Source of the DNA: Oikopleura dioica
Taxonomy: Eukaryota; Animalia; Chordata
Direction: 5' to 3'
Assembly: GCA_907165135.1 (NCBI GenBank)
Contig: OU015567.1
Span: forward strand, 14,198,001-14,262,000
Length of the DNA stretch: 64,000 nt
In this document: positions 34,211-51,868 of the stretch, one piece after another
How the letters are laid out: each line of letters opens with the position of its first letter
Numbering within the stretch: position 1 is the first letter of the stretch
The notes under the pieces: model-generated
What the model was told of the DNA's origin: nothing
The model's database searches: none
What the model saw: the letters and a program-made list of their open reading frames with translations, nothing else
Program-made: the position numbers and the translations under genes

Positions 34211-34899
34211 TTAGTTTTTCTTGGTTCGGAGGTCGTTAATCAGCTCGTCGAGCTTTTTAATGTCCCACGAGTCCATCCGCCGCTGGTTGGAGGAATAGTC
34301 GGTGAACCAGGTATTGTGCGCGGCGGTGAAAAGCGCATGGAACCAGCTTGGTGAATCCAGGCCCTTGATTCCGGGCTTGTCGTCGATCAGCAGGTCGCCG
34401 CGGACGATTGTCTTGTCCTTGGTCAGCATCAACTGGGAAACTGCTTTCTTTCCGAGGTGTTTTTCGACCCATTGGTATTTTTCGGTCACGCAGAATTTGT
34501 AGTTCGTAATTGGCGCCGAGCAAATCACAACTAAAATAAAGCTTTTAATCAATATTTTAATTGAATATAACCTTCAATATCCTCTCGACTGTTGAGATAT
34601 TCAAATGCTTCAACGGCTCCTTTCACTGGAGGAAGATTCAGGAACCAGCCTTCTTCTTCGTAGACCTCGTTCGGGTTCGTTATTCCGAGCTGGTTCTTGT
34701 AATCGTTTCGAACCAAGAATTCTTTGCGTTCTTCGAGAGGGATGAATGGTCGACCTGGCCATTTTTCTTGGTAGGTTTTCAAGAAAGTCGCTAAAGTTAA
34801 AATCAAAAATAAGGTAAAAATAGGTTATTTCTTACGTTCCCAATCGCACAAAACACCGTCCATATCAATCAGAACTCTGAACTTCTTCGTCTCCGACAT
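34211..34899 (-). CDS. NT5M: 5'(3')-deoxyribonucleotidase (HAD family)
   Basis: RVLIDMDGVLCD, FLNLPPVKGAVEA, VICSAPI, EKYQWVEKHLG, LTKDKTIVRGDLLIDDKP, LFTAAHN. NT5M versus NT5C not resolved. Confidence 0.92.
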
Positions 34900-35194
34900 T
34901 TTCTCTTTCTTATCAGCAACTAATCCGTGCTTTTTCTAGCGTTTTGTACTTCTCGAAAGGGCGATTCTTCCTCAAGCGTCAAGCGACAGCGCTGATTGGC
35001 CCGATTCTTTCCTTCAAGAGATTTTTGGACTGTACCCAGAAATTCCGGCAATCCAGGTTACTGTAGTACTCACTTCTTTTATAATCGGGAAATGGAATGG
35101 TATTTAAATTGAGACATTTTTCAATTGAAAACTGGTCTTTCTAAATAATAAAATTCAATAATTCAGAATTTTATGGTTTTTTTCTCTTCAGAAA

Positions 35195-38100
35195 ATGTTT
35201 CGAAATCGAGTCACTCAAATCATCAGAGCTGCATCTTCTAAGCCCGAGAAAATCTTTTCCTCTCAACTTTCAAAACTCTCAAAAGGCGAGAAACTAACGC
35301 AAGAATTGCAAGTTCTCCAGTTCGACGAAAAGCGCGATCTCTTCAGAAGAAATCGAAAGAAGCGCGTTCAAACTCGAGATTTGGAGAATCAATACGACTT
35401 GCTTCAGAATTTGGAGAGAACAGGAATTATCAGAAATCACTGGCCACTGCATGAAGCGAAGAAGATCAATCAATGGGTTAACAATCACGCGAGGAAGATT
35501 GTTGTTGTTTTTGATGTTTCAAAGGCGTTTACGATGAGAGATGCTGTTTCAGGTAAGAACTTTTAGTTTGAATCCGAACCCTAGCCTGGCTCAGCAAACT
35601 CTGTAGAGAACCTGAGTAAGCCTGAAATATCGTATGAAAAGCCGCATAGTTTTAAATTACCTTTCCAGTCTATTTTTAGATTCTGGTGATCCTTCAGGCC
35701 CTGACTAAGGTTTTATTCACAGAATGCCGAGCCCAGATCCGGCTAACCCGATTTTTCAACGCTCTTTTCTGAATGATATTATTAAAATTATGAGACAGTG
35801 ATACTAAATAGTCTATTAACAAGAAGTTTTTATACTCTAAACAAGACTACGCTAGTATGCTAGCATTTGTTTAAAAGCCGATAGCTATCGTATCCACCGG
35901 CATCGTAAATTTGCGGCATTAAAACATAACCGACGTCTTCTTGTAGGGAGAAGGAGATGCTGTAACTTGACATGTTCATGTGTAGTTCAAGAAACGCATC
36001 TTGATTCCGCCCAAAAAGCATCATCCGGCCATGACTGTTGATTAGGAAGTTGTAATCGAAGTAAAAGTTCCATTTTCCAGCGAGTACAGAGTTAGACTGA
36101 ACGTCCAGATTTTGACCTCCCATGTATATCCATCGATCTTTTTTAGGTCAAATAAGTGAAAATACCGTTTGAACTTGAAAAATTTAAGTAAGCAAAAAGA
36201 CCAGTTCCGAGAGTGTATCTATAGACGACTATCCACAAGCTGTATTCTTGCTTTTTCGTTGCAACAATGAAAAAATTCACGCCTGTTTTATCTGCAATCG
36301 GCACTGTATCTTGTACGTCCGTAAATATGATCTGGCAATTTTCATCGTGTGAAAAAATCACACTATTCCCCATGCATTTATTTCCCCAGGAGGAGTAGGA
36401 CCACTCTTAGACATCTATTTACCGTTCTTTCAAAAAGCGCGAAGGTTACCTTTGTCGTTTACACTTGACAAAGTAGCCCAACGTAGGTTCATTTCCTCAA
36501 AGTTTTTGAAAATCAGAAACACTTTTCCTTTCCATGAGTACATGTGCGATCTTCCAGAGACAAAATGTCTTAGTTTTGGTCTAAGGCTGATCGTTCGCTT
36601 GTGAATAGAAGGATTCACGTAGAAGCATTGGTCAGCAGAACTCACTGGAGCACATAAAATAATGAGTCTTTGTGAATCCTTCTCAAGCCAGGCTGAACCT
36701 GTGACTGATGATCCACCGGGAAAGTTGAATTTGTAAAACATGCGCCTAAACTTTTTTCACATTTCTAAAGTGGAATTTACCCCGCTCGCGGTGGTGGAAT
36801 ACGAGGGATGAGTTTTTCCCCGGTGAACTCTGCAAAGCCTCCCTTGTAGCTGATCAAGTAAAACTTCCCCTCAAACAAAACGCTTGTCATTCGCATGTAG
36901 TAATACCAACAATCAAATCCGTAATCGTTTAGGGTGCTATCAGTCCATATCATTATATTATTATCCGAAAGTAGGCCAGTTTGATTCATACATTTTGTCT
37001 CTTCAGTTTGGCTAGAAAAGTCATGAATACAGACTTTTGGAATCTCTCTCCGACGGAATTTTTGCACATCTTGAACTACTTGCAGCCCTCTTTTTCCTTG
37101 CTTCGTACATTTGAAGTAAGGGCAAGGGCAGCCTTTTGGGCATAACGAAGCAAACGGACAGACTTTCGATGAAAGCTCCTCTTTTTCGTCTGCCATCGCG
37201 GCGCACAAAGTAAAACATTCAAGAGCATTTCCGCATAGTCCCTCGCATATTTTTCTGCCATAGAAAAATTGCTGATTGCAGGCTCGGACATTCATTTTCT
37301 GATCTATTCCTGAAAACACTTCTTCTTCGATCGCTGGTCTCTCTTCCAGAATTTTTTGATCTCTTCGGTTGGCTGGATAAACTCCCCTTTTGCTCGGCAA
37401 TGGTTGAATGAAAGAGTACAAGGGTCATAAATGTGATTCTTCAAACACGCTCGGTATTGAATATTGCAGTCTGAAACGACAACGTTTAATTTTTCGAGGC
37501 CGATATAGTTCGCTATTAGAACTATTGTCATCCAAAATATACTCCCAAGTCCGACAAAGATGATTTTCTGTTTTGTTGTCGCATTTCCACTAAAATAAAA
37601 CTAAGAGTAACTCTGAGATATCCTTCTTACTGAGGCTCGAGGTAGCTTTTATCATCGTATTTTTCATAAACCACGGGAAATTTTGGGACGAGGAGAACTT
37701 TATCATCTCTCAATATAAGCTCCCCCACGCAGTTACAGTCCAAGCACTTTTCTAGTGATAAAACATTGAATAATATGAATCTTAAAATATTAAAAAAATC
37801 ACCATCCTTGGCTCTCATTCTCTTCTTGTCAAGTAAAACTGCTTCGTTTTTTACGTAATATTATTTCGTCTTCGGGATGAGTACGGAAGGTCGGTAACTC
37901 ACATGTCACCTATTTTATAATGACAGATGTCAAACATGGTATTTCAAAGGTCTTTTTTGAACGCTTTTTGTTCTTGAGCTCTTTGCCTCTTTTTCATTCC
38001 ACATCAAAAACTGGCCTTTCAAAATTTTCATTCAGTGACAGCTCTTCTTCTGGCAGGCGAATTAGGCCACAAGCCATTAATTCTCCTTGACGATCGAAAA

Positions 38101-39443
38101 ATCCGCAACAGAAAAGCACACCGCTCGGCCGTAGAATCTATTCTTCGCCCAGTCGCCCGAATCTACAAAAACTTTCTTCTTTCTTCCTGGTTCCCCAAGT
38201 CAAAGTATTACAATTTTCCAGAAATAACATTCCGACTTGCTTCAAATTCAAAAGATGACTTTAAAAATGTCAAAAAATTAACAAATGAACTGGTTTCGGA
38301 CGAAACAGCAGAAGCTGCCGCCGTAATTTCAAATCTTAATCTTTCTGGTACGAAATCATTCTTTCCCAAAGCCTTATTTTATTTTAGACGGGGCCTATGT
38401 CTTTCTGATCGACGACAGAAACACAACTTTCACTCAAGAAGCATTCGAAGTCGCAGAAATTATGAACGAATTTTCGCCCAAAAAAGCCCTTCGTTCGAAT
38501 ATCTGGTTTGAATTGGATTCCTCGCTATTCAATGATTTTACAGAAGACTATCTTTTGAATGAAGAAGTTCAGCCGTATGGAGTCAAAGATTTCATTTGGA
38601 AGCGATTGTATAAAGAAGATAAAGAAGGCTGCAAGAAGATTCTGAGGAAACTGACGGTAGCGAACGAAGATCAAATTAAGAGGCATATTATGAATGTTCA
38701 AGGTTTGGTCCGATACCCTAATACAGATAATAACGATTATTTGCTCAAAAACTCGTTTATTTCCAATTTCAATAATTATCAGACCATTCTACGAGGCGAA
38801 ACCCGTCGCGAACTAGGAATCAAGCTCTCCAAAAACAAGCTCCTTCATCAAGTCACAGATGAAATCCTCAGGTCCCTCCTAGGAGCGGAAGAAGTGGAAC
38901 ACGCGCGACTGACGCATCTTGCTCTGGAAGGCGATTTTAGTGCGATTTCTGTGCTCGATGACGATCAAATCGCGCTGATTACTGCGAAAGTCGATACATA
39001 TGATTGGAAAAAGCAGGCGGATTATTCATTCAGAGAATTTTTAATTGAATCTGGTAAGGATTTGGTAAGAAAAAAAAAAGACAACCAGAAAATTAAGGGC
39101 TTATGTCTTCAAATGAAATCGACGCTGAAGAAAAGCTGTGGCGATCAGTAAAATCATCTCGTCCAAGAATCAATGGAATCCCTATTTCTGATGCGGATCA
39201 AATTTTTATCTGGGACTGGATGATTCTTCCGAATAACTTAAGTTTCGTCAATTTCAAGGTAAAAATAATTCCTTGTTTTTTTTTCCTACAACTGCTTCCT
39301 AGGGCGAAACATTCGCAATAAAATGGTTTGACGATGAGAGAGTTGAGAACTTACGAGAAGAACATGGAAGATTTTTGAAAGAAAAAATTGATTCTGTAAA
39401 ACATTTATCTGGCTCTAAATCTGACAGAATAAAAGTTCTATGA
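35195..39443 (+). CDS. Mitochondrial tyrosyl-tRNA-synthetase-like protein lacking catalytic motifs (putative pseudo-synthetase)
   Basis: Exons 35195-35552, 38036-38350, about 38389-39052, about 39097-39258 and 39303-39443 join in frame via GT-AG introns. Presequence-like N-terminus; DLLQNLERTGIIRNHWP, KIVVVFDVSK, GHKPLILL, QVTDEILRSLLGAEEVEHAR..LAL and LIESGLMSS...RING...GETFAIKW align colinearly with YARS2/bacterial TyrRS including the S4-like domain. Confidence 0.78.
35860..37818 (-). CDS. Cys-rich, probably membrane-anchored protein with propeller-like repeats, nested antisense in the 2.5-kb intron of the TyrRS-like gene
   Basis: Hydrophobic IIFVGLGSIFWMTIVLIANYIGL; C-x-C modules (CNIQYRAC..C..C; CEGLC..C..C...CPFASLCPKGCPCPYFKC); MTSVLFEGKFYLISYKG and YSWKGKVFLIF strands. 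Frame break near T6 at 37352-37357. Confidence 0.65.
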
Positions 39444-47857: not shown

Positions 47858-50800
47858 ATGAGATTCTTGGCGGTGATTGTCGGGATTGTACGAGAAAATC
47901 AAAAATATAGAGATGGACGGACTTTATCTTTATTCAGGTTGCATTGGAGCTGACTCAATCACATGAAAGGGACCCAGATCAAGTTTTTCTTCCCGAAGAT
48001 GATGGTGAGGAGCCTATGCGAATCGCTGATGCACGTGGTAATCAAGGACCTTATGAAGATCTAATGATAGCTCCATGGCAAGTTCCGATTCTTTCCGAAA
48101 ACTTCGGTATGAAGCTGGAACACATGCGAATCGACCACAATGGGCTGTCAGAGCCACCTGGAATGGAAGGACGAGCGATTCCAACCTATATGTACTCGAA
48201 AAATTGGGACTTTATCGATGAAAAAGGTCGAATTCGCGTTCCGTATTACATTGACCACACGGTACCAGAGGAATACCACGCAGGAATCCACGAAGGTCTA
48301 CTTGAATTCAATCGAGCTGTCGGTTGCATTGAGTTTTACTTCGATGAAGAGCGCTTTCACTGGCACGGAATCCATGTTTTCGGCGAAGACGATGAAGGTA
48401 CCAGTCCAGGATGCTGGTCTTTTATAGGACAATGTCCTAATTGCAACATGCATAAATACAACCACCAGGGGATGCGTGACGGTTGGCAACCACTTCGTCT
48501 ACCAAACTGGTGCACTGGACTCGGCGGTGTACACCACGAGTTTCTCCACGCTTTGGGCTTCCTCCATGAACAAGAGCGACCAGATGTCTGGAAGTACGTG
48601 GTAAATAATACAAATTGGCACTATCCGATGAGCAAAAATCAGTGGATCGACAGTGGCCATCCATTTGAGCCCTATTCTGGCGTGATGCCCAACGGATATG
48701 ATTTGAGAAACGGAGGTAAATACAAATCAGCGGTAATGCTCACCACCACCGATGCTGAACAACTTCACTGGCTCTACTGCAGAGACCTCGAGGTTTACCA
48801 TCCGATGCCTCCAAAAAGTCAACGTCTCTCACCAGATGTAATTGGTTTTATGCGGCCGATTTTCCATCACCGTCTGTGTGACAACTACGTCGATTGCTAC
48901 GATGGTTCAGATGAAGACGGAAGCCTTGCTGTTTGCAAAAATCCATACGGAAAAACCGATCTTGGCTGCTGCAAACGACTCAAGGGATGGGACGATGGCG
49001 CGATCTGCACTTCCAATGGAACAATGGCGAACGGAAGAGATGTATACTGGTGCGACGGAAGTCTTGCAAAGCGACTTGAGTTCCCGATCGTGGGTGGACA
49101 ATGTTCGACAGCGAAACTGGAAACGGAAAACAAGCATGGAGTTATACAGGCGACAGTGATCTTCCATGCGTAGGTGACAATGATGAGTTCGACCAATTTT
49201 TCATCTGGGGCAAGCATCAATTGAAGCTTTCTTGTCCCGTCTACGGTATAGAACGTCTTCAGCCGTGTATTGATCATAATTGTACTGATGATGAGCGTTG
49301 TGTCAACATTGATGAGACCTCGTTCTCCTGCATTCCTCGTCCAACTGTTACAACCACAACCACAAGTACAGTAAGCTCGGAAGGAACTGTTTGGTTTGAA
49401 TCGTACAATGAAACGGTTAACTACGCAGAAGCTAAAGAAAATTGCTCGAAACTCGCGCTGGATTATCCGGATACAATCGGTTTTCCATCTTTCTTCAGGA
49501 ACGAAAGAGAGTACAAGGTGTTTCGCCACCAAGTTGGCGAACGTAAAGAATGGCTCGGTTTTGAGCAACAAAATGGTGACACCACTCAATGGCTAAATGC
49601 TGATGGGTCGGAAGTTACCTTCGAACACTGGGATCTGTGGCATTCCACTGCACAGCCTAATCATGATTACCAACCATGTGTCATCACTGGCTATGGTGGA
49701 GATCCAAAATGGCATGACGTTGAATGTCATTCAGATCTCGTTTACTCCTGTAGATTCGAGTCATCTTCACTGACAACCACACCATTTACATTTACGAGTA
49801 CGACATCAACAACTGCTACTACCACAACAACCACCACAACGACAACTACAACGACAACTACAACAACAATCATTTCTGAGGGGACAGTTTGGTTTGAGGA
49901 ACAAGAAGACGTAGCAGTCTCTTACGCTACGGCGAAGGCAAATTGCGCGGCGAAAGCACTTGAATACGAAAATACTGTCGGATATCCATCTTTTTTTAGA
50001 AATGAAAAAGAGTGGGACCTCTACAGCCGTCAAGTGACTGTTCGAAGAGAATGGCTTGGACTGGAGCAGCAGGAAAATCATACAATGTGGCTTCATGCTG
50101 ATGGTTCAGAAGTCACCTTCACCTATTGGGATGCCCCCTGGCAGCCAAATCGAAATGACCAGCCGTGCGTCATAACTGGCTGGTCTGATATTCGAAAATG
50201 GCATGATATCCATTGCACCTACGGCGGAACTCGTCATTCTTGCCGCTTCGAATCATCGACACTAACCACCACTACGTCCACAACAACCACAACTACAACA
50301 TCAACAGTCATGTCAGCTGGGACCGTTTGGTTCGAAGAAATGGACGAGATAAACCTCAACTATACGATAGTGAAAGAAAACTGTGCTGAATATGCGAAAA
50401 ACTACCCAGGAACAGTCGGCTATCCCTCATTCTTCCGAAACAAGCATGAATGGGATCTTTACTCGAAAACAGTTACGCACCGCCGAGAATGGCTCGGTTA
50501 TGAGCAGAAATATTCAAATACCACTGAATTTTGGCTGAACGCAGATGGCACTGAAGCGACGTTTTTGAACTGGGAGGCGAAGTACGATCAGCCGAATAAT
50601 TACACTCAACAATGTGTTATTACTGGTTATACATTTTCGCGAGACTTTCATGATGTCGATTGCGATCATTTATTCGATGATTCAAATATAGACAAACAAG
50701 TCAAAAAACTGCACTACTCTTGTAGATTAGAAACTATCGGCACTACAAGTACGACAACAATTACGACGACCACTACCACAACAACAACTTCCACAACAAC

Positions 50801-51868
50801 GACTACAACAACAACTACAACTACAACATCGACGACAACGACGACAACGACGACAACTACGACTACAACTACGACAACGACGACAACAACATCTACAACG
50901 ACTACAACTACAACTACAACTACAACTACAACTACTACGACTACGACTACGACTACAACTACAACTACAACTACAACTACAACTACAACTACAACTACAA
51001 CTACAACTACAATTACAACTTCGACTACAAGTACGACTTCGACTTCAACTACAACAACGACTACAACGACTACAACAACTACAACTACGACAACGACGAC
51101 AACTACGACTACCACAACAACTTCCACAACAACGACTTCTACGACCACCTCGACTACCACAACAAGCACAACGACTTCAACAACTACGACAACAACTTCC
51201 CAGACATCAACACCTGCTGAAATATGTTCTGAAAGTGCCATTCCACCTGAGTTCGCAAGCTCTGGAACGTTTGAATGGGTTTGTACAGAGAAGTCGAAAT
51301 TCACCGACTGCAAGATTAAATGTGAGGGACAAGCTAAACCGGACCAAAAATTCATCATTCGCTGCAAGACGAATGACAATATCTGGACTCTTCGTAAAGG
51401 TTCAGTTCCAAGCTGTGCTCCTGAGCCTCCAAGAGCCGGATGTGAAGAGTCGACGATTCCAGACAAGTTAAAGTCTCCTGGCGGAAACTCGTGGACTTGT
51501 GTAGACAGTAAAAAGATCGAAAATGCACGGCAATTTGCGACGACGGAAGCGACAGTCAAGGATTCCAAATAAAGTGCAAGTTTCCCAAAACCGGTCAATC
51601 AACGTGGGTTAAATCAAATAGAAAAACAGATCCTCCTCTTTGTGGCGCGGAAGGACCAAAGATTTGCCACCAAGATGACATCGACGCAGATTTAATACCC
51701 GATGGTTCAGTCGTTTGGGACTGCAGCACAACCTCAAAACAAAATGTCTGTCAAGCTACTTGTACCAATGGAGCTGATGCGGATAAGGTCTACAGAGTAA
51801 AGTGTCAGAACAAAAAGAACACTTGGAAAGTTGAAAAGAAGAAAATGACAAAGATTGAATGCTCATAA
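47858..51868 (+). CDS. Astacin (M12A) metalloprotease fused to LDLa, EGF, three C-type lectin domains, a poly-Thr mucin stalk and three sushi-like modules; frameshifts at about 49084 and 51512
   Basis: Signal peptide; HEFLHALGFLHEQERPD zinc motif; CDNYVDCYDGSDE (LDLa); CIDHNCTDDERCVNIDETSFSC (EGF); three CTLD repeats (WLG...QPN...CV...WHD..C); terminal WxC..C...C modules. Confidence 0.88.
50741..51200 (+). repeat. Coding (ACN)n trinucleotide repeat giving a poly-Thr/Ser mucin stalk
   Basis: Uninterrupted ACA/ACT/ACG-rich tract of about 150 codons within the astacin ORF. Confidence 0.95.

What the first reader, a model, noticed from the sequence alone, without database searches (positions are those of the whole stretch)
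35195..39443. Mitochondrial tyrosyl-tRNA synthetase fold with all catalytic motifs erased: candidate pseudo-synthetase
Seen and aligned by eye: the protein keeps TyrRS architecture end to end (N-terminal L..L..RG, Rossmann strand ..FD, GH...L, helical domain, S4-like C-terminus, mitochondrial-type presequence). However, YCGFDPTADSLHVGH becomes VVVFDVSKAFTMRD (HIGH and the Tyr-pocket Tyr lost), YQVLQAYD becomes AEAAAVIS, GGSDQ becomes IDDRN, and no KMSKS-like motif remains. The ORF is intact across five exons, which argues for selection. Established precedents: insect SLIMP (inactive mitochondrial SerRS paralog) and Neurospora CYT-18 (mitochondrial TyrRS acting as an RNA splicing factor). Inference: a repurposed RNA-binding factor for mitochondrial RNA processing or translation, or a sign that mitochondrial Tyr charging has moved to another enzyme.
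Basis: partly seen in the sequence, partly recalled or inferred. Interest (0 to 1): 0.85.

Follow-up and report, generated by a model that had tools for sequence, protein, structure and literature searches.

The report
Catalytically dead mitochondrial TyrRS relic
This tunicate (Oikopleura dioica) expresses and conserves a gene descended from the bacterial/mitochondrial-type enzyme that loads tyrosine onto tRNA, although every catalytic signature is gone; it was probably re-used for another, still unknown job after the mitochondria lost their own tRNA genes.

Summary
The gene is real at 35195-39443 (+). It has six exons, not five: RNA contigs show an extra in-frame 93-nt intron at 38703-38795, giving 514 aa.

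O. dioica's protein alone is not recognisable as TyrRS. Pfam, PDB phmmer and single-sequence hhalign all fail. A 28%-identical, fully colinear ortholog from marine metagenomes ("spB", blastp E 1e-55) bridges it:
- spB pieces hit only TyrRS chains in the PDB (best E 1.6e-4).
- spB alone versus a TyrRS alignment gives hhalign E 1.4e-5.
- The O. dioica+spB profile aligns end to end with E. coli TyrRS (E 2e-6; score 34.3; shuffle maxima 10.8 global, 22 local).

In that alignment HIGH is TMRD/TLSS, GGSDQ is DDRN/PPNL, the KMSKS loop is deleted, and the tyrosine-pocket residues (Asp and Gln) are lost.

The gene is expressed and under purifying selection between O. dioica lineages (pN 0.13; pS 0.65-0.79).

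A 2024 paper reports that O. dioica mtDNA keeps only tRNA-Met and scored mitochondrial TyrRS as lost. This gene is its overlooked, repurposed remnant.

What it does now is inferred, not shown. An RNA or tRNA-handling role is plausible, but the S4-like domain has lost its net positive charge. The scan earlier noted a ValRS-derived pseudo-synthetase elsewhere in this genome.

The parts
35195..35552 (+). Exon 1 (aa 1-119 plus 1 base). It holds a basic N-terminal extension (aa 1-63, 17 K/R against 7 D/E), the TyrRS N-terminal helix LLQNLERTGI (35399-35428), the first Rossmann strand VVVFDVS (35501-35521), and TMRD in place of HIGH (35531-35542).
   Evidence: Gene model. RNA contig 35214-35414. Exon 1 alone against the spB N-terminus gives E 4.6e-6 and is colinear. 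Motif map. Charge.
35553..38035 (+). Intron 1 (2483 nt, phase 1). It contains unexplained antisense ORFs, for example 36777-37421 (-), 214 aa.
   Evidence: GT..AG ends. The joint is supported only by colinearity with spB and TyrRS, with no RNA reads across it. ORFs. No family match. No repeat copies or terminal inverted repeats.
38036..38347 (+). Exon 2. It keeps GHKP (38065-38076). ILLDD (38080-38094) replaces ALVGG, and the following GATGLIGDPS loop is missing. It also holds a reduced CP1-like region and AEAAAVIS (38308-38331).
   Evidence: Reads of a divergent O. dioica lineage map at 38215-38250. Selection against L014: pN 0.133, pS 0.649.
38388..38702 (+). Exon 3. The strand and turn FLIDDRN (38402-38422) stand in place of LQIGGSDQ. 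The KMSKS-loop deletion site is NDF|TED (38531-38548). QPYGV (38570-38584) corresponds to TSPYKFY, and LRKLTVAN marks the start of the helical domain.
   Evidence: RNA contig 38589-38700 joined to 38794-38898. Selection against L007: pN 0.126, pS 0.787.
38703..38795 (+). Retaining it would add 31 aa.
   Evidence: Spliced out in a metatranscriptome contig and in fragment P0001. In lineage L007 a stop follows the donor.
38796..39053 (+). Exon 4. This is the alpha-helical (anticodon-binding) domain, with SLLGAEE (38873-38893) corresponding to LVHGEEG, and the linker REFLIES (39032-39052).
39098..39258 (+). Exon 5. This is the S4-like C-terminal domain, with RINGIP (39166-39183) and DWMILPNNLS (39214-39243). 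It is the best-conserved segment between O. dioica and spB (42% identity).
   Evidence: Introns on both sides confirmed by an RNA contig. Conservation. Alignment.
39303..39443 (+). Exon 6. It holds the last S4-like strand FAIKW (39312-39326, corresponding to LICW), a 37-aa tail and the TGA stop.

Best explanation
This is the appendicularian descendant of the bacterial/mitochondrial-type tyrosyl-tRNA synthetase (the YARS2 lineage). It can no longer activate tyrosine or charge tRNA.

Shown here:
- It keeps the full TyrRS domain order: N-terminal helix, Rossmann fold, reduced CP1, alpha-helical domain and S4-like C-terminal domain.
- It lacks HIGH, KMSKS, GGSDQ and the tyrosine-pocket residues.
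- The same losses are present in a very distant ortholog (28% identity), so the dead state is old.
- It is transcribed, correctly spliced, and evolves under strong purifying selection.

Inferred:
- Catalysis became dispensable when the mitochondrial tRNA-Tyr gene was lost and cytosolic tRNA-Tyr, charged by the cytosolic enzyme, was imported.
- The protein survived because it had, or acquired, a non-catalytic binding function.

The mechanism I favour is that it acts as a scaffold that binds RNA. The most likely ligands are imported tRNA (as carrier or chaperone) or the highly unusual mitochondrial transcripts and mini-rRNAs. Binding would use the conserved TyrRS body plus a conserved, strongly basic 50-63-aa N-terminal extension.

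Sub-confidences:
- TyrRS-derived: 0.9.
- Catalytically dead: 0.9.
- Functional under selection: 0.85.
- Acts by binding RNA or tRNA in mitochondria: about 0.4.
For: Homology chain:
- O. dioica against spB: blastp E 1e-55 over 501 colinear residues.
- spB exon B against the PDB: only TyrRS chains are hit, with 2ts1 at E 1.6e-4 to 2.4e-4, then 1jii and human mitochondrial 2pid.
- spB N-terminal exon against the PDB: only TyrRS chains, residues 2-82, E 0.25-0.5.
- Local TyrRS HMM: spB scores 15.5 bits, p 3e-7.
- hhalign of the O. dioica+spB profile against a TyrRS alignment: E 2e-6, O. dioica 64-477 to E. coli 1-424, score 34.3. In 100 shuffles the maximum was 22 (local) and 10.8 (global).
- spB alone gives 29.6, so the O. 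dioica row adds signal.
- Language-model features of spB exon B return only TyrRS clusters.
- The Foldseek top 30 are all bacterial or mitochondrial TyrRS, although weak.

Motif loss is documented.

Expression and splicing:
- Metatranscriptome contigs with 0-1 mismatches.
- 32 RNA-seq reads from a divergent lineage.
- Spliced fragment P0001.

Selection:
- pN 0.126 against pS 0.787 over 147 codons.
- pN 0.133 against pS 0.649 over 103 codons.
- The ORF is intact in two species that share only 28% identity.

Context from the literature:
- O. dioica mtDNA has only tRNA-Met. Mitochondrial TyrRS was scored absent by HMM and tRNA import is assumed. The rRNAs are 215 and 242 nt, and 65 poly-U stretches are excised by an unknown machinery (PMC11384887).
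- A precursor mitochondrial aaRS acting as a non-charging tRNA import carrier is known in yeast (pre-MSK1; PMC4394434).

N-terminal extension: K/R against D/E is 17:7 in O. dioica and 14:3 in spB, with shared SKP and EKRD motifs and no acidic residue in the first 15 aa.
Against: - O. dioica's protein alone gives no significant TyrRS match. The assignment rests on one bridging sequence of unknown taxon.
- No RNA read spans the exon1-exon2 joint that carries the HIGH-equivalent.
- AlphaFold models were poor. pLDDT was 41 without TyrRS rows in the alignment and 58 with them, so the fold match is weak and partly circular.
- Nothing here shows RNA binding or mitochondrial location.
- The S4-like domain is net acidic (-2 in O. 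dioica, -7 in spB, against +2 in E. coli). The RRGKK cluster is FKGE in O. dioica.
- The basic N-terminal clusters could equally be a nuclear-localisation-like signal.
- I could not search the whole genome for a second TyrRS. That point rests on PMC11384887.
Confidence: 0.6

Rival explanations
1. The protein is a TyrRS-derived pseudoenzyme that now works through protein-protein contacts, as an adaptor or regulator, and not by binding RNA. The way SLIMP binds LON protease is an example. It may act outside mitochondria.
For: - The most conserved block is a hydrophobic/aromatic C-terminal motif (DW.ILPNN.S.V......F.IKW) in a domain that has become net acidic.
- The canonical basic tRNA-contact cluster is degraded in O. 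dioica.
- The KKRR / RRNRKKR clusters in the N-terminal extension resemble nuclear-localisation signals.
- SLIMP is a precedent for an orthogonal protein-binding surface (PMC10570016).
Against: - No partner is known.
- The basic extension and the retained helical domain are equally compatible with RNA binding.
- The bacterial-type ancestry and the acid-free N-terminus point to mitochondria.
Confidence: 0.25
2. The gene is a transcribed but functionless remnant, a slowly decaying pseudogene of mitochondrial TyrRS.
For: All catalytic motifs are gone, its substrate tRNA gene is gone from mtDNA, and RNA depth is very low.
Against: - A 514-535-aa ORF and its splice sites are intact in two species at 28% identity.
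- pN is 0.13 where pS is 0.65-0.79, and third codon positions are 48-50% identical against 83-91% for first and second positions.
- The conserved blocks are not random.
Confidence: 0.05
3. The protein is still an active TyrRS that uses a non-canonical active site, or it becomes active as a heterodimer with another subunit.
For: - TyrRS works as a dimer with tRNA bound across subunits, so a dead subunit could in principle supply only tRNA binding. The SLIMP/SerRS2 heterodimer is a precedent.
- spB keeps the Tyr that corresponds to E. coli Tyr37.
Against: - HIGH, KMSKS, GGSDQ, the GDP loop Asp and the Gln/Asp of the tyrosine pocket are all missing or replaced in both species.
- No second bacterial-type TyrRS was reported in two O. 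dioica proteomes, and none is in this window.
Confidence: 0.04
4. The resemblance to TyrRS is a chance or convergent similarity, and the protein belongs to an unrelated fast-evolving family.
For: Pfam finds nothing in any piece. O. dioica alone is not significant against TyrRS. The AlphaFold models have low confidence.
Against: - Two separate pieces of spB each hit only TyrRS chains in the PDB, in the correct order: residues 2-82 and 239-373.
- The full-length colinear hhalign score is far beyond 100 shuffles.
- The language-model and Foldseek hit lists are purely TyrRS.
Confidence: 0.03

Closest known systems
Animal mitochondrial tyrosyl-tRNA synthetase (YARS2) and bacterial TyrRS (class Ic; Pfam PF00579 + PF22421 + S4 PF01479)
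   Same: - The domain order and length are the same, with an end-to-end alignment of O. dioica 64-477 to E. coli 1-424.
- Shared landmarks are the N-terminal L..L..RG helix, GH(K/R)P, (S/Q)PY after the KMSKS position, L.(H/L)G..G in the helical domain, and ING and IKW in the S4-like domain.
- Human mitochondrial TyrRS is the best PDB hit of the family profile.
   Different: - HIGH, KMSKS, GGSDQ, the GDP loop and the tyrosine-pocket residues are absent.
- CP1 is shortened.
- A conserved basic N-terminal extension of 50-63 aa is present.
- The S4-like domain is net acidic.
- The protein falls below Pfam detection.
[quoted passage not shown]
   Same: Both are mitochondrial aaRS descendants whose catalytic pocket is ablated and which are kept by selection for another role.
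   Different: - SLIMP is a class II SerRS paralog that heterodimerises with an active SerRS2 subunit, and the complex still aminoacylates.
- Here no active bacterial-type TyrRS partner is known. The dead protein appears to be the only descendant of the ortholog, in a lineage that lost the cognate mitochondrial tRNA gene.
Neurospora CYT-18 and other Pezizomycotina mitochondrial TyrRS (group I intron splicing factors; PMC4275181)
   Same: Both use a mitochondrial TyrRS scaffold for a second RNA-related job. Both have an N-terminal extension, and their C-terminal domain is involved. CYT-18 chains appear among the weak fold matches.
   Different: - CYT-18 keeps full aminoacylation activity and motifs.
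- Its RNA-binding insertions are fungal-specific.
- No group I introns are described in O. dioica mtDNA.
- RNA binding is not shown for the O. dioica protein.
Yeast pre-MSK1 (precursor of mitochondrial LysRS) as carrier for tRNA-Lys(CUU) import (reviewed in PMC4394434)
   Same: It is a mitochondrial aaRS that binds a cytosolic tRNA it cannot charge and takes it into mitochondria. This is the non-catalytic job a dead mitochondrial TyrRS could do in an organism that must import almost all of its tRNAs.
   Different: - MSK1 is still an active enzyme for the mtDNA-encoded tRNA-Lys.
- It is a class II enzyme.
- No import data exist for Oikopleura.
Leishmania double-length TyrRS pseudo-dimer
   Same: It contains a TyrRS module that has lost catalytic function and is retained for tRNA binding and architecture.
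   Different: It is a cytosolic, eukaryotic-type TyrRS, and the dead module is fused to an active one in the same chain.

Membership tests
Bacterial/mitochondrial-type TyrRS (evolutionary family) | Significant full-length, colinear sequence or profile similarity to TyrRS | tested here: met
   Met through the intermediate ortholog. The O. dioica+spB profile against a TyrRS alignment gives hhalign E 2e-6 and score 34.3, with shuffle maxima of 22 (local) and 10.8 (global). spB against the PDB hits only TyrRS, with E 1.6e-4. O. dioica alone is not significant.
Bacterial/mitochondrial-type TyrRS (evolutionary family) | Pfam PF00579 (tRNA-synt_1b) at the gathering threshold | tested here: not met
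   No PF00579 hit at E<=10 for any exon piece of O. dioica or spB.
Bacterial/mitochondrial-type TyrRS (evolutionary family) | Alpha-helical anticodon-binding domain followed by an S4-like C-terminal domain | tested here: met
   Aligned to E. coli 246-424, with the SPY, L.HG, ING and IKW landmarks. The confident part of the model (residues 130-230) superposes on the TyrRS helical domain, weakly.
Functional TyrRS enzyme (EC 6.1.1.1) | HIGH signature | tested here: not met
   HLGH is TMRD in O. dioica (35531-35542) and TLSS in spB.
Functional TyrRS enzyme (EC 6.1.1.1) | KMSKS-type loop (KFGKT) | tested here: not met
   There is a 9-residue gap at this position in both species, and no K..K(S/T) motif nearby.
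Functional TyrRS enzyme (EC 6.1.1.1) | Tyrosine and adenylate pocket: Tyr37, the Asp of the GDP loop, Tyr175/Gln179/Asp182, and GGSDQ (E. coli numbering) | tested here: not met
   Tyr37 is Val in O. dioica and is kept in spB. The GDP loop is deleted. Gln and Asp are replaced in both alternative alignment registers. GGSDQ is DDRN in O. dioica and PPNL in spB, or is deleted in the other register.
Functional TyrRS enzyme (EC 6.1.1.1) | Tyrosine activation and tRNA-Tyr charging | not testable with these tools
   This needs ATP-PPi exchange and aminoacylation assays.
SLIMP-type mitochondrial pseudo-aaRS | Descent from a mitochondrial aaRS with an ablated active site, retained under selection | tested here: met
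SLIMP-type mitochondrial pseudo-aaRS | Coexists and heterodimerises with an active paralogous subunit | not testable with these tools
PMC11384887 reports no mitochondrial TyrRS in two O. dioica proteomes, and none lies in this window.
SLIMP-type mitochondrial pseudo-aaRS | Mitochondrial localisation | tested here: inconclusive
   The first 15 aa have 3 K/R and 0 D/E, with an amphipathic NRVTQIIRAAS segment. No targeting predictor or localisation experiment was available.
CYT-18-type bifunctional splicing TyrRS | Retains aminoacylation motifs while binding group I introns | tested here: not met
   The motifs are lost. No group I introns are mentioned for O. dioica mtDNA.

The most novel reading that the evidence does not exclude
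After appendicularian mitochondria lost nearly all tRNA genes, several mitochondrial aminoacyl-tRNA synthetases were not simply discarded. They were kept as catalytically dead tRNA-handling proteins: this TyrRS relic, and the ValRS-derived pseudo-synthetase noted elsewhere in this genome. In this reading they act as carriers or chaperones for imported cytosolic tRNAs, or as protein replacements in the drastically reduced mitoribosome or the poly-U excision machinery. That would be an animal tRNA-import or mitochondrial RNA factor class built from dead synthetases.
Probability: 0.15. Interest if true: 0.85.

Novelty: new variant of a known kind. Interest (0 to 1): 0.66.

Why it matters
A published survey (PMC11384887) lists mitochondrial TyrRS as lost in O. 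dioica. This work shows that a remnant exists, diverged beyond standard HMM detection, and that selection still maintains it.

This changes the picture of what happens to mitochondrial aaRS genes when mitochondrial tRNA genes disappear. The outcome is not only loss or retargeting, but also conversion into a pseudoenzyme.

It also gives a concrete, testable candidate for two poorly understood areas of animal biology. One is tRNA import into mitochondria. The other is the unknown machinery that serves O. dioica's odd mitochondrial RNAs: 215- and 242-nt rRNAs and the excision of 65 poly-U stretches.

It warns as well that presence/absence tables based on HMMs can miss repurposed relics in fast-evolving lineages.

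Tried and rejected
1. Direct family and structure-database searches with O. dioica pieces gave no TyrRS signal. These were Pfam, PDB phmmer, Atlas features, blastp against E. coli TyrRS and single-sequence hhalign.

2. The representative search (1.84 billion proteins) with the exon 3 piece returned only 5 hits: three O. dioica fragments, spB (P0004) and one spurious repeat protein, P0005. No full-length annotated protein was available, so no full-length fold could be submitted.

3. Attempts to find more relatives all failed:
- Word-based searches with P0004 and exon 2 found only P0004 itself and one O. dioica lineage fragment, P0126.
- A degenerate DW.ILPNN.S.V DNA scan of JGI metagenomes gave 6 chance hits with stops and no tblastn support.

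4. AlphaFold2:
- The larvacean-only alignment gave pLDDT 41 and was unusable.
- Adding enterobacterial TyrRS rows gave pLDDT 58.
- The Foldseek list is TyrRS-only, but E is 0.01-0.5 and the result is partly circular, so it counts as weak support only.

5. The raw RNA-seq runs belong to a divergent O. dioica lineage and covered only 35 nt, so the exon1-exon2 joint could not be checked with reads.

6. L006 first looked like a cDNA contig. It is a diverged genomic haplotype with indels and not a spliced RNA.

7. There is no microsynteny between the window and the spB contig, and the taxon of spB could not be determined.

8. Formal dN/dS was undefined because synonymous sites are saturated. pN and pS are reported instead.

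9. The supplementary aaRS table of PMC11384887 is not held.

Full report
**Organism and context.** Klirs et al. 2024 (PMC11384887) report three relevant points:
- An HMM survey of two O. dioica proteomes found all cytosolic aaRS but only the Gly, Phe and Met mitochondrial aaRS. Mitochondrial TyrRS was therefore scored as lost.
- The mitochondrial rRNAs are only 215 and 242 nt, and 65 poly-U stretches are excised from transcripts by an unknown mechanism.

**Gene model.**
- Near-identical metatranscriptome contigs (0-1 mismatches) cover exon 1 (35214-35414).
- The same contigs confirm introns 39054-39097 and 39259-39302.
- They also reveal an additional in-frame 93-nt intron, 38703-38795.
- The same splice is seen in database fragment P0001. 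In another O. dioica lineage (L007) a stop codon follows that donor at once.

The gene therefore has six exons and encodes 514 aa: 35195-35552, 38036-38347, 38388-38702, 38796-39053, 39098-39258 and 39303-39443.

Three bulk RNA-seq runs come from a divergent O. dioica lineage and map only at 38215-38250. Their flanks match that lineage's ortholog (P0126/L014, 'SWFPKSKFYAFPE'), which shows expression there too.

No read spans the exon1-exon2 or exon2-exon3 joints.

**Is it TyrRS?** With the O. dioica sequence alone the answer is 'not detectable'. Five tests failed:
- Pfam finds nothing in any exon piece.
- PDB phmmer finds nothing relevant.
- Language-model features find nothing.
- blastp against E. 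coli TyrRS (L001) is noise.
- Single-sequence hhalign against a TyrRS alignment is not above shuffles (global z 0.7).

The exhaustive representative search found one informative relative, P0004 (34% identity, E 1e-10). It is encoded on marine metagenome contigs, including a TARA scaffold (L002-L006). I rebuilt that gene, which I call 'spB': L002 9175-9637, 9816-10678 and 10744-11025, giving 535 aa.

O. dioica and spB align colinearly over 501 residues at 28% identity, E 1e-55. A single spB exon runs straight across the position of the O. dioica exon1/exon2 joint. O. dioica exon 1 alone matches the spB N-terminus (E 4.6e-6) immediately before the part that matches exon 2. This supports the unverified joint and argues against hidden exons.

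spB is closer to the ancestor:
- Its large exon hits only TyrRS chains in the PDB: 2ts1 at E 1.6e-4 to 2.4e-4, then 1jii, human mitochondrial 2pid, 2jan and fungal mitochondrial 5ihx. The match covers TyrRS 239-373.
- Its N-terminal exon independently hits only TyrRS chains, at residues 2-82, with E 0.25-0.5.
- A TyrRS HMM built locally from 117 enterobacterial sequences scores spB at 15.5 bits, p 3e-7, in two colinear domains.
- hhalign of the O. dioica+spB profile against the TyrRS alignment gives a global end-to-end match, O. dioica 64-477 to E. coli 1-424, with E 2e-6 and score 34.3.
- In 100 column-shuffled controls the scores were 16.3 +/- 2.5 (maximum 22) in local mode and 3.1 +/- 2.3 (maximum 10.8) in global mode.
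- spB alone scores 29.6 (E 1.4e-5), so the O. dioica row adds to the match.
- The family profile's only PDB hits at E<=1 are human mitochondrial TyrRS and S. aureus TyrRS.
- Atlas language-model features of spB exon B return only TyrRS clusters, scoring 0.86-0.88.

Structure prediction was weak.
- With only larvacean rows the model had pLDDT 41.
- With TyrRS rows added it had pLDDT 58, and residues 130-230 reached 70-88.
- Foldseek's first 30 PDB matches are all bacterial or mitochondrial TyrRS, but with E 0.01-0.5 and TM about 0.3, and the alignment contained TyrRS.

I count the fold result as consistent, not as independent proof. Overall, homology to bacterial/organellar-type TyrRS is well supported by transitivity.

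**Catalytic motifs (alternative register).**

| E. coli TyrRS | O. dioica | spB |
|---|---|---|
| LYCGFDPTADS-LHLGH | IVVVFDVS-KAFTMRD | VYTVLPVD-RPLTLSS |
| ALVGG-ATGLIGDPS (carries the Tyr-OH-binding Asp) | ILLDD, rest of loop deleted | VLDD, rest of loop deleted |
| LQIGGSDQ | FLIDDRN | GLIPPNL |
| KFGKT (KMSKS) loop | 9-residue gap | 9-residue gap |

HIGH is lost in both species. The pocket Tyr is lost in O. dioica and kept in spB.

MAFFT offers another register, in which the segment (A/T)F(S/T)..A(Y/F)EVA(D/E)I pairs with the FSYNLLQGYDF helix and the GGSDQ segment is deleted. In that register Gln179 becomes D/E and Asp182 becomes N. Under either register the enzyme chemistry is gone.

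Retained landmarks are L..LE..G, GH(K/R)P, (S/Q)PY, LKLT/RKLT, L.(H/L)G..G, REFLIES, ING and IKW.

Both species share the losses, so the inactive state predates their deep split.

**Selection.** I compared Okinawa with the other O. dioica lineages.
- Against L007, over 147 codons of exons 2-3: pN 0.126 and pS 0.787. Synonymous sites are saturated, so NG86 dS is undefined. Codon-position identities are 0.83, 0.91 and 0.48.
- Against L014, over 103 codons of exon 2: pN 0.133 and pS 0.649. By my Jukes-Cantor arithmetic this corresponds to roughly dN 0.15, dS 1.5 and omega about 0.1.

Together with intact ORFs and splice sites in two species at 28% identity, this excludes a decaying pseudogene.

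**What might it do?**
- Conservation between O. dioica and spB is highest in the S4-like domain (42%) and in the N-terminal helix with the first Rossmann half (34%).
- The S4-like domain has lost its positive net charge: E. coli +2, O. dioica -2, spB -7. The RRGKK cluster is FKGE in O. dioica and LRRQ in spB. Canonical anticodon-arm binding is therefore doubtful.
- Both proteins carry a basic N-terminal extension, with K/R against D/E of 17:7 and 14:3. They share SKP and EKRD motifs and KKRR-type clusters.
- The first 15 residues of the O. dioica protein have no acidic residue and form an amphipathic stretch. This is compatible with a presequence but was not tested.

I favour a non-catalytic RNA or tRNA-handling role in mitochondria, with three candidate jobs:
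- An import carrier or chaperone in the manner of yeast pre-MSK1.
- A recruit to the protein-dependent mini-rRNA ribosome.
- A cofactor of poly-U excision.

A pure protein-adaptor role, as for SLIMP's extra surface, is a serious rival. None of these is shown.

**Comparison and novelty.** Pseudo-synthetases are known, such as SLIMP and the dead half of the Leishmania TyrRS pseudo-dimer. Mitochondrial TyrRS moonlighting is also known (CYT-18). Three things are different here:
- The apparently sole descendant of the mitochondrial TyrRS ortholog lost all catalytic motifs, in a lineage that lost the cognate mitochondrial tRNA gene.
- It diverged beyond standard HMM detection and was therefore published as 'lost'.
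- It is nevertheless maintained by selection.

An earlier scan note reports a ValRS-derived pseudo-synthetase elsewhere in this genome (not re-tested here). This hints at a general pattern. I rate the finding as a new variant of a known kind, with interest about 0.66.

**Limits.**
- There is only one bridging ortholog, and its taxon is unknown.
- The junction that carries the HIGH-equivalent has no RNA evidence.
- No full-length fold could be made, because a spliced protein cannot be handed to the fold tool by reference.
- No whole-genome search for another TyrRS was possible.

Noticed in passing
window 35860-37421 (-), inside intron 1 of the TyrRS-like gene: A string of antisense ORFs (87, 76, 103 and 214 aa) fills the 2.5-kb first intron and looks like a nested gene. 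It has no Pfam family, no convincing Atlas match, no other copy in the window and no terminal inverted repeats. No RNA coverage was seen in the runs laid on it.
   Followed up: partly
window 38703-38795: The 93-nt intron is in frame and free of stops in the Okinawa genome, so its retention would give a 545-aa isoform. In lineage L007 the equivalent intron starts with a stop. This is a trap for gene prediction.
   Followed up: yes
L014:1-380 (another O. dioica lineage, intron upstream of exon 2): The intron 1 sequence next to exon 2 is filled with tandem 'TCAGCTCAGCTTTTT'-like repeats. This is quite unlike the Okinawa intron 1, so this intron is evolving rapidly between cryptic species.
   Followed up: no
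L007:585-720 and L014:815-889: Palindromic 'GCTGAGCGAAGCGAAGC...GCTTCGCTTCGC...CAGC' elements (MITE-like hairpins) sit in the introns after exon 3 (L007) and after exon 2 (L014) of the non-Okinawa lineages. They are absent from the Okinawa introns.
   Followed up: no
window 35180-35194: A polypyrimidine tract and an AG ('tttttttctcttcag') end 4 nt before the ATG. This fits a spliced-leader trans-splice acceptor with an almost absent 5' UTR, as is common in O. dioica.
   Followed up: no
window 50766-51188 against L002:18184-18525: This is the only other tblastx similarity between the window and the spB contig (E about 2e-9, opposite orientation). It lies in a strongly AT-skewed part of the window and is probably a low-complexity Ser/Thr-rich protein, not synteny.
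   Followed up: no
window 34211-34806 (-): The upstream neighbour on the minus strand reads like a 5'(3')-deoxyribonucleotidase-type HAD phosphatase ('DLLIDDKPGIKG...'). This was judged by eye only.
   Followed up: no
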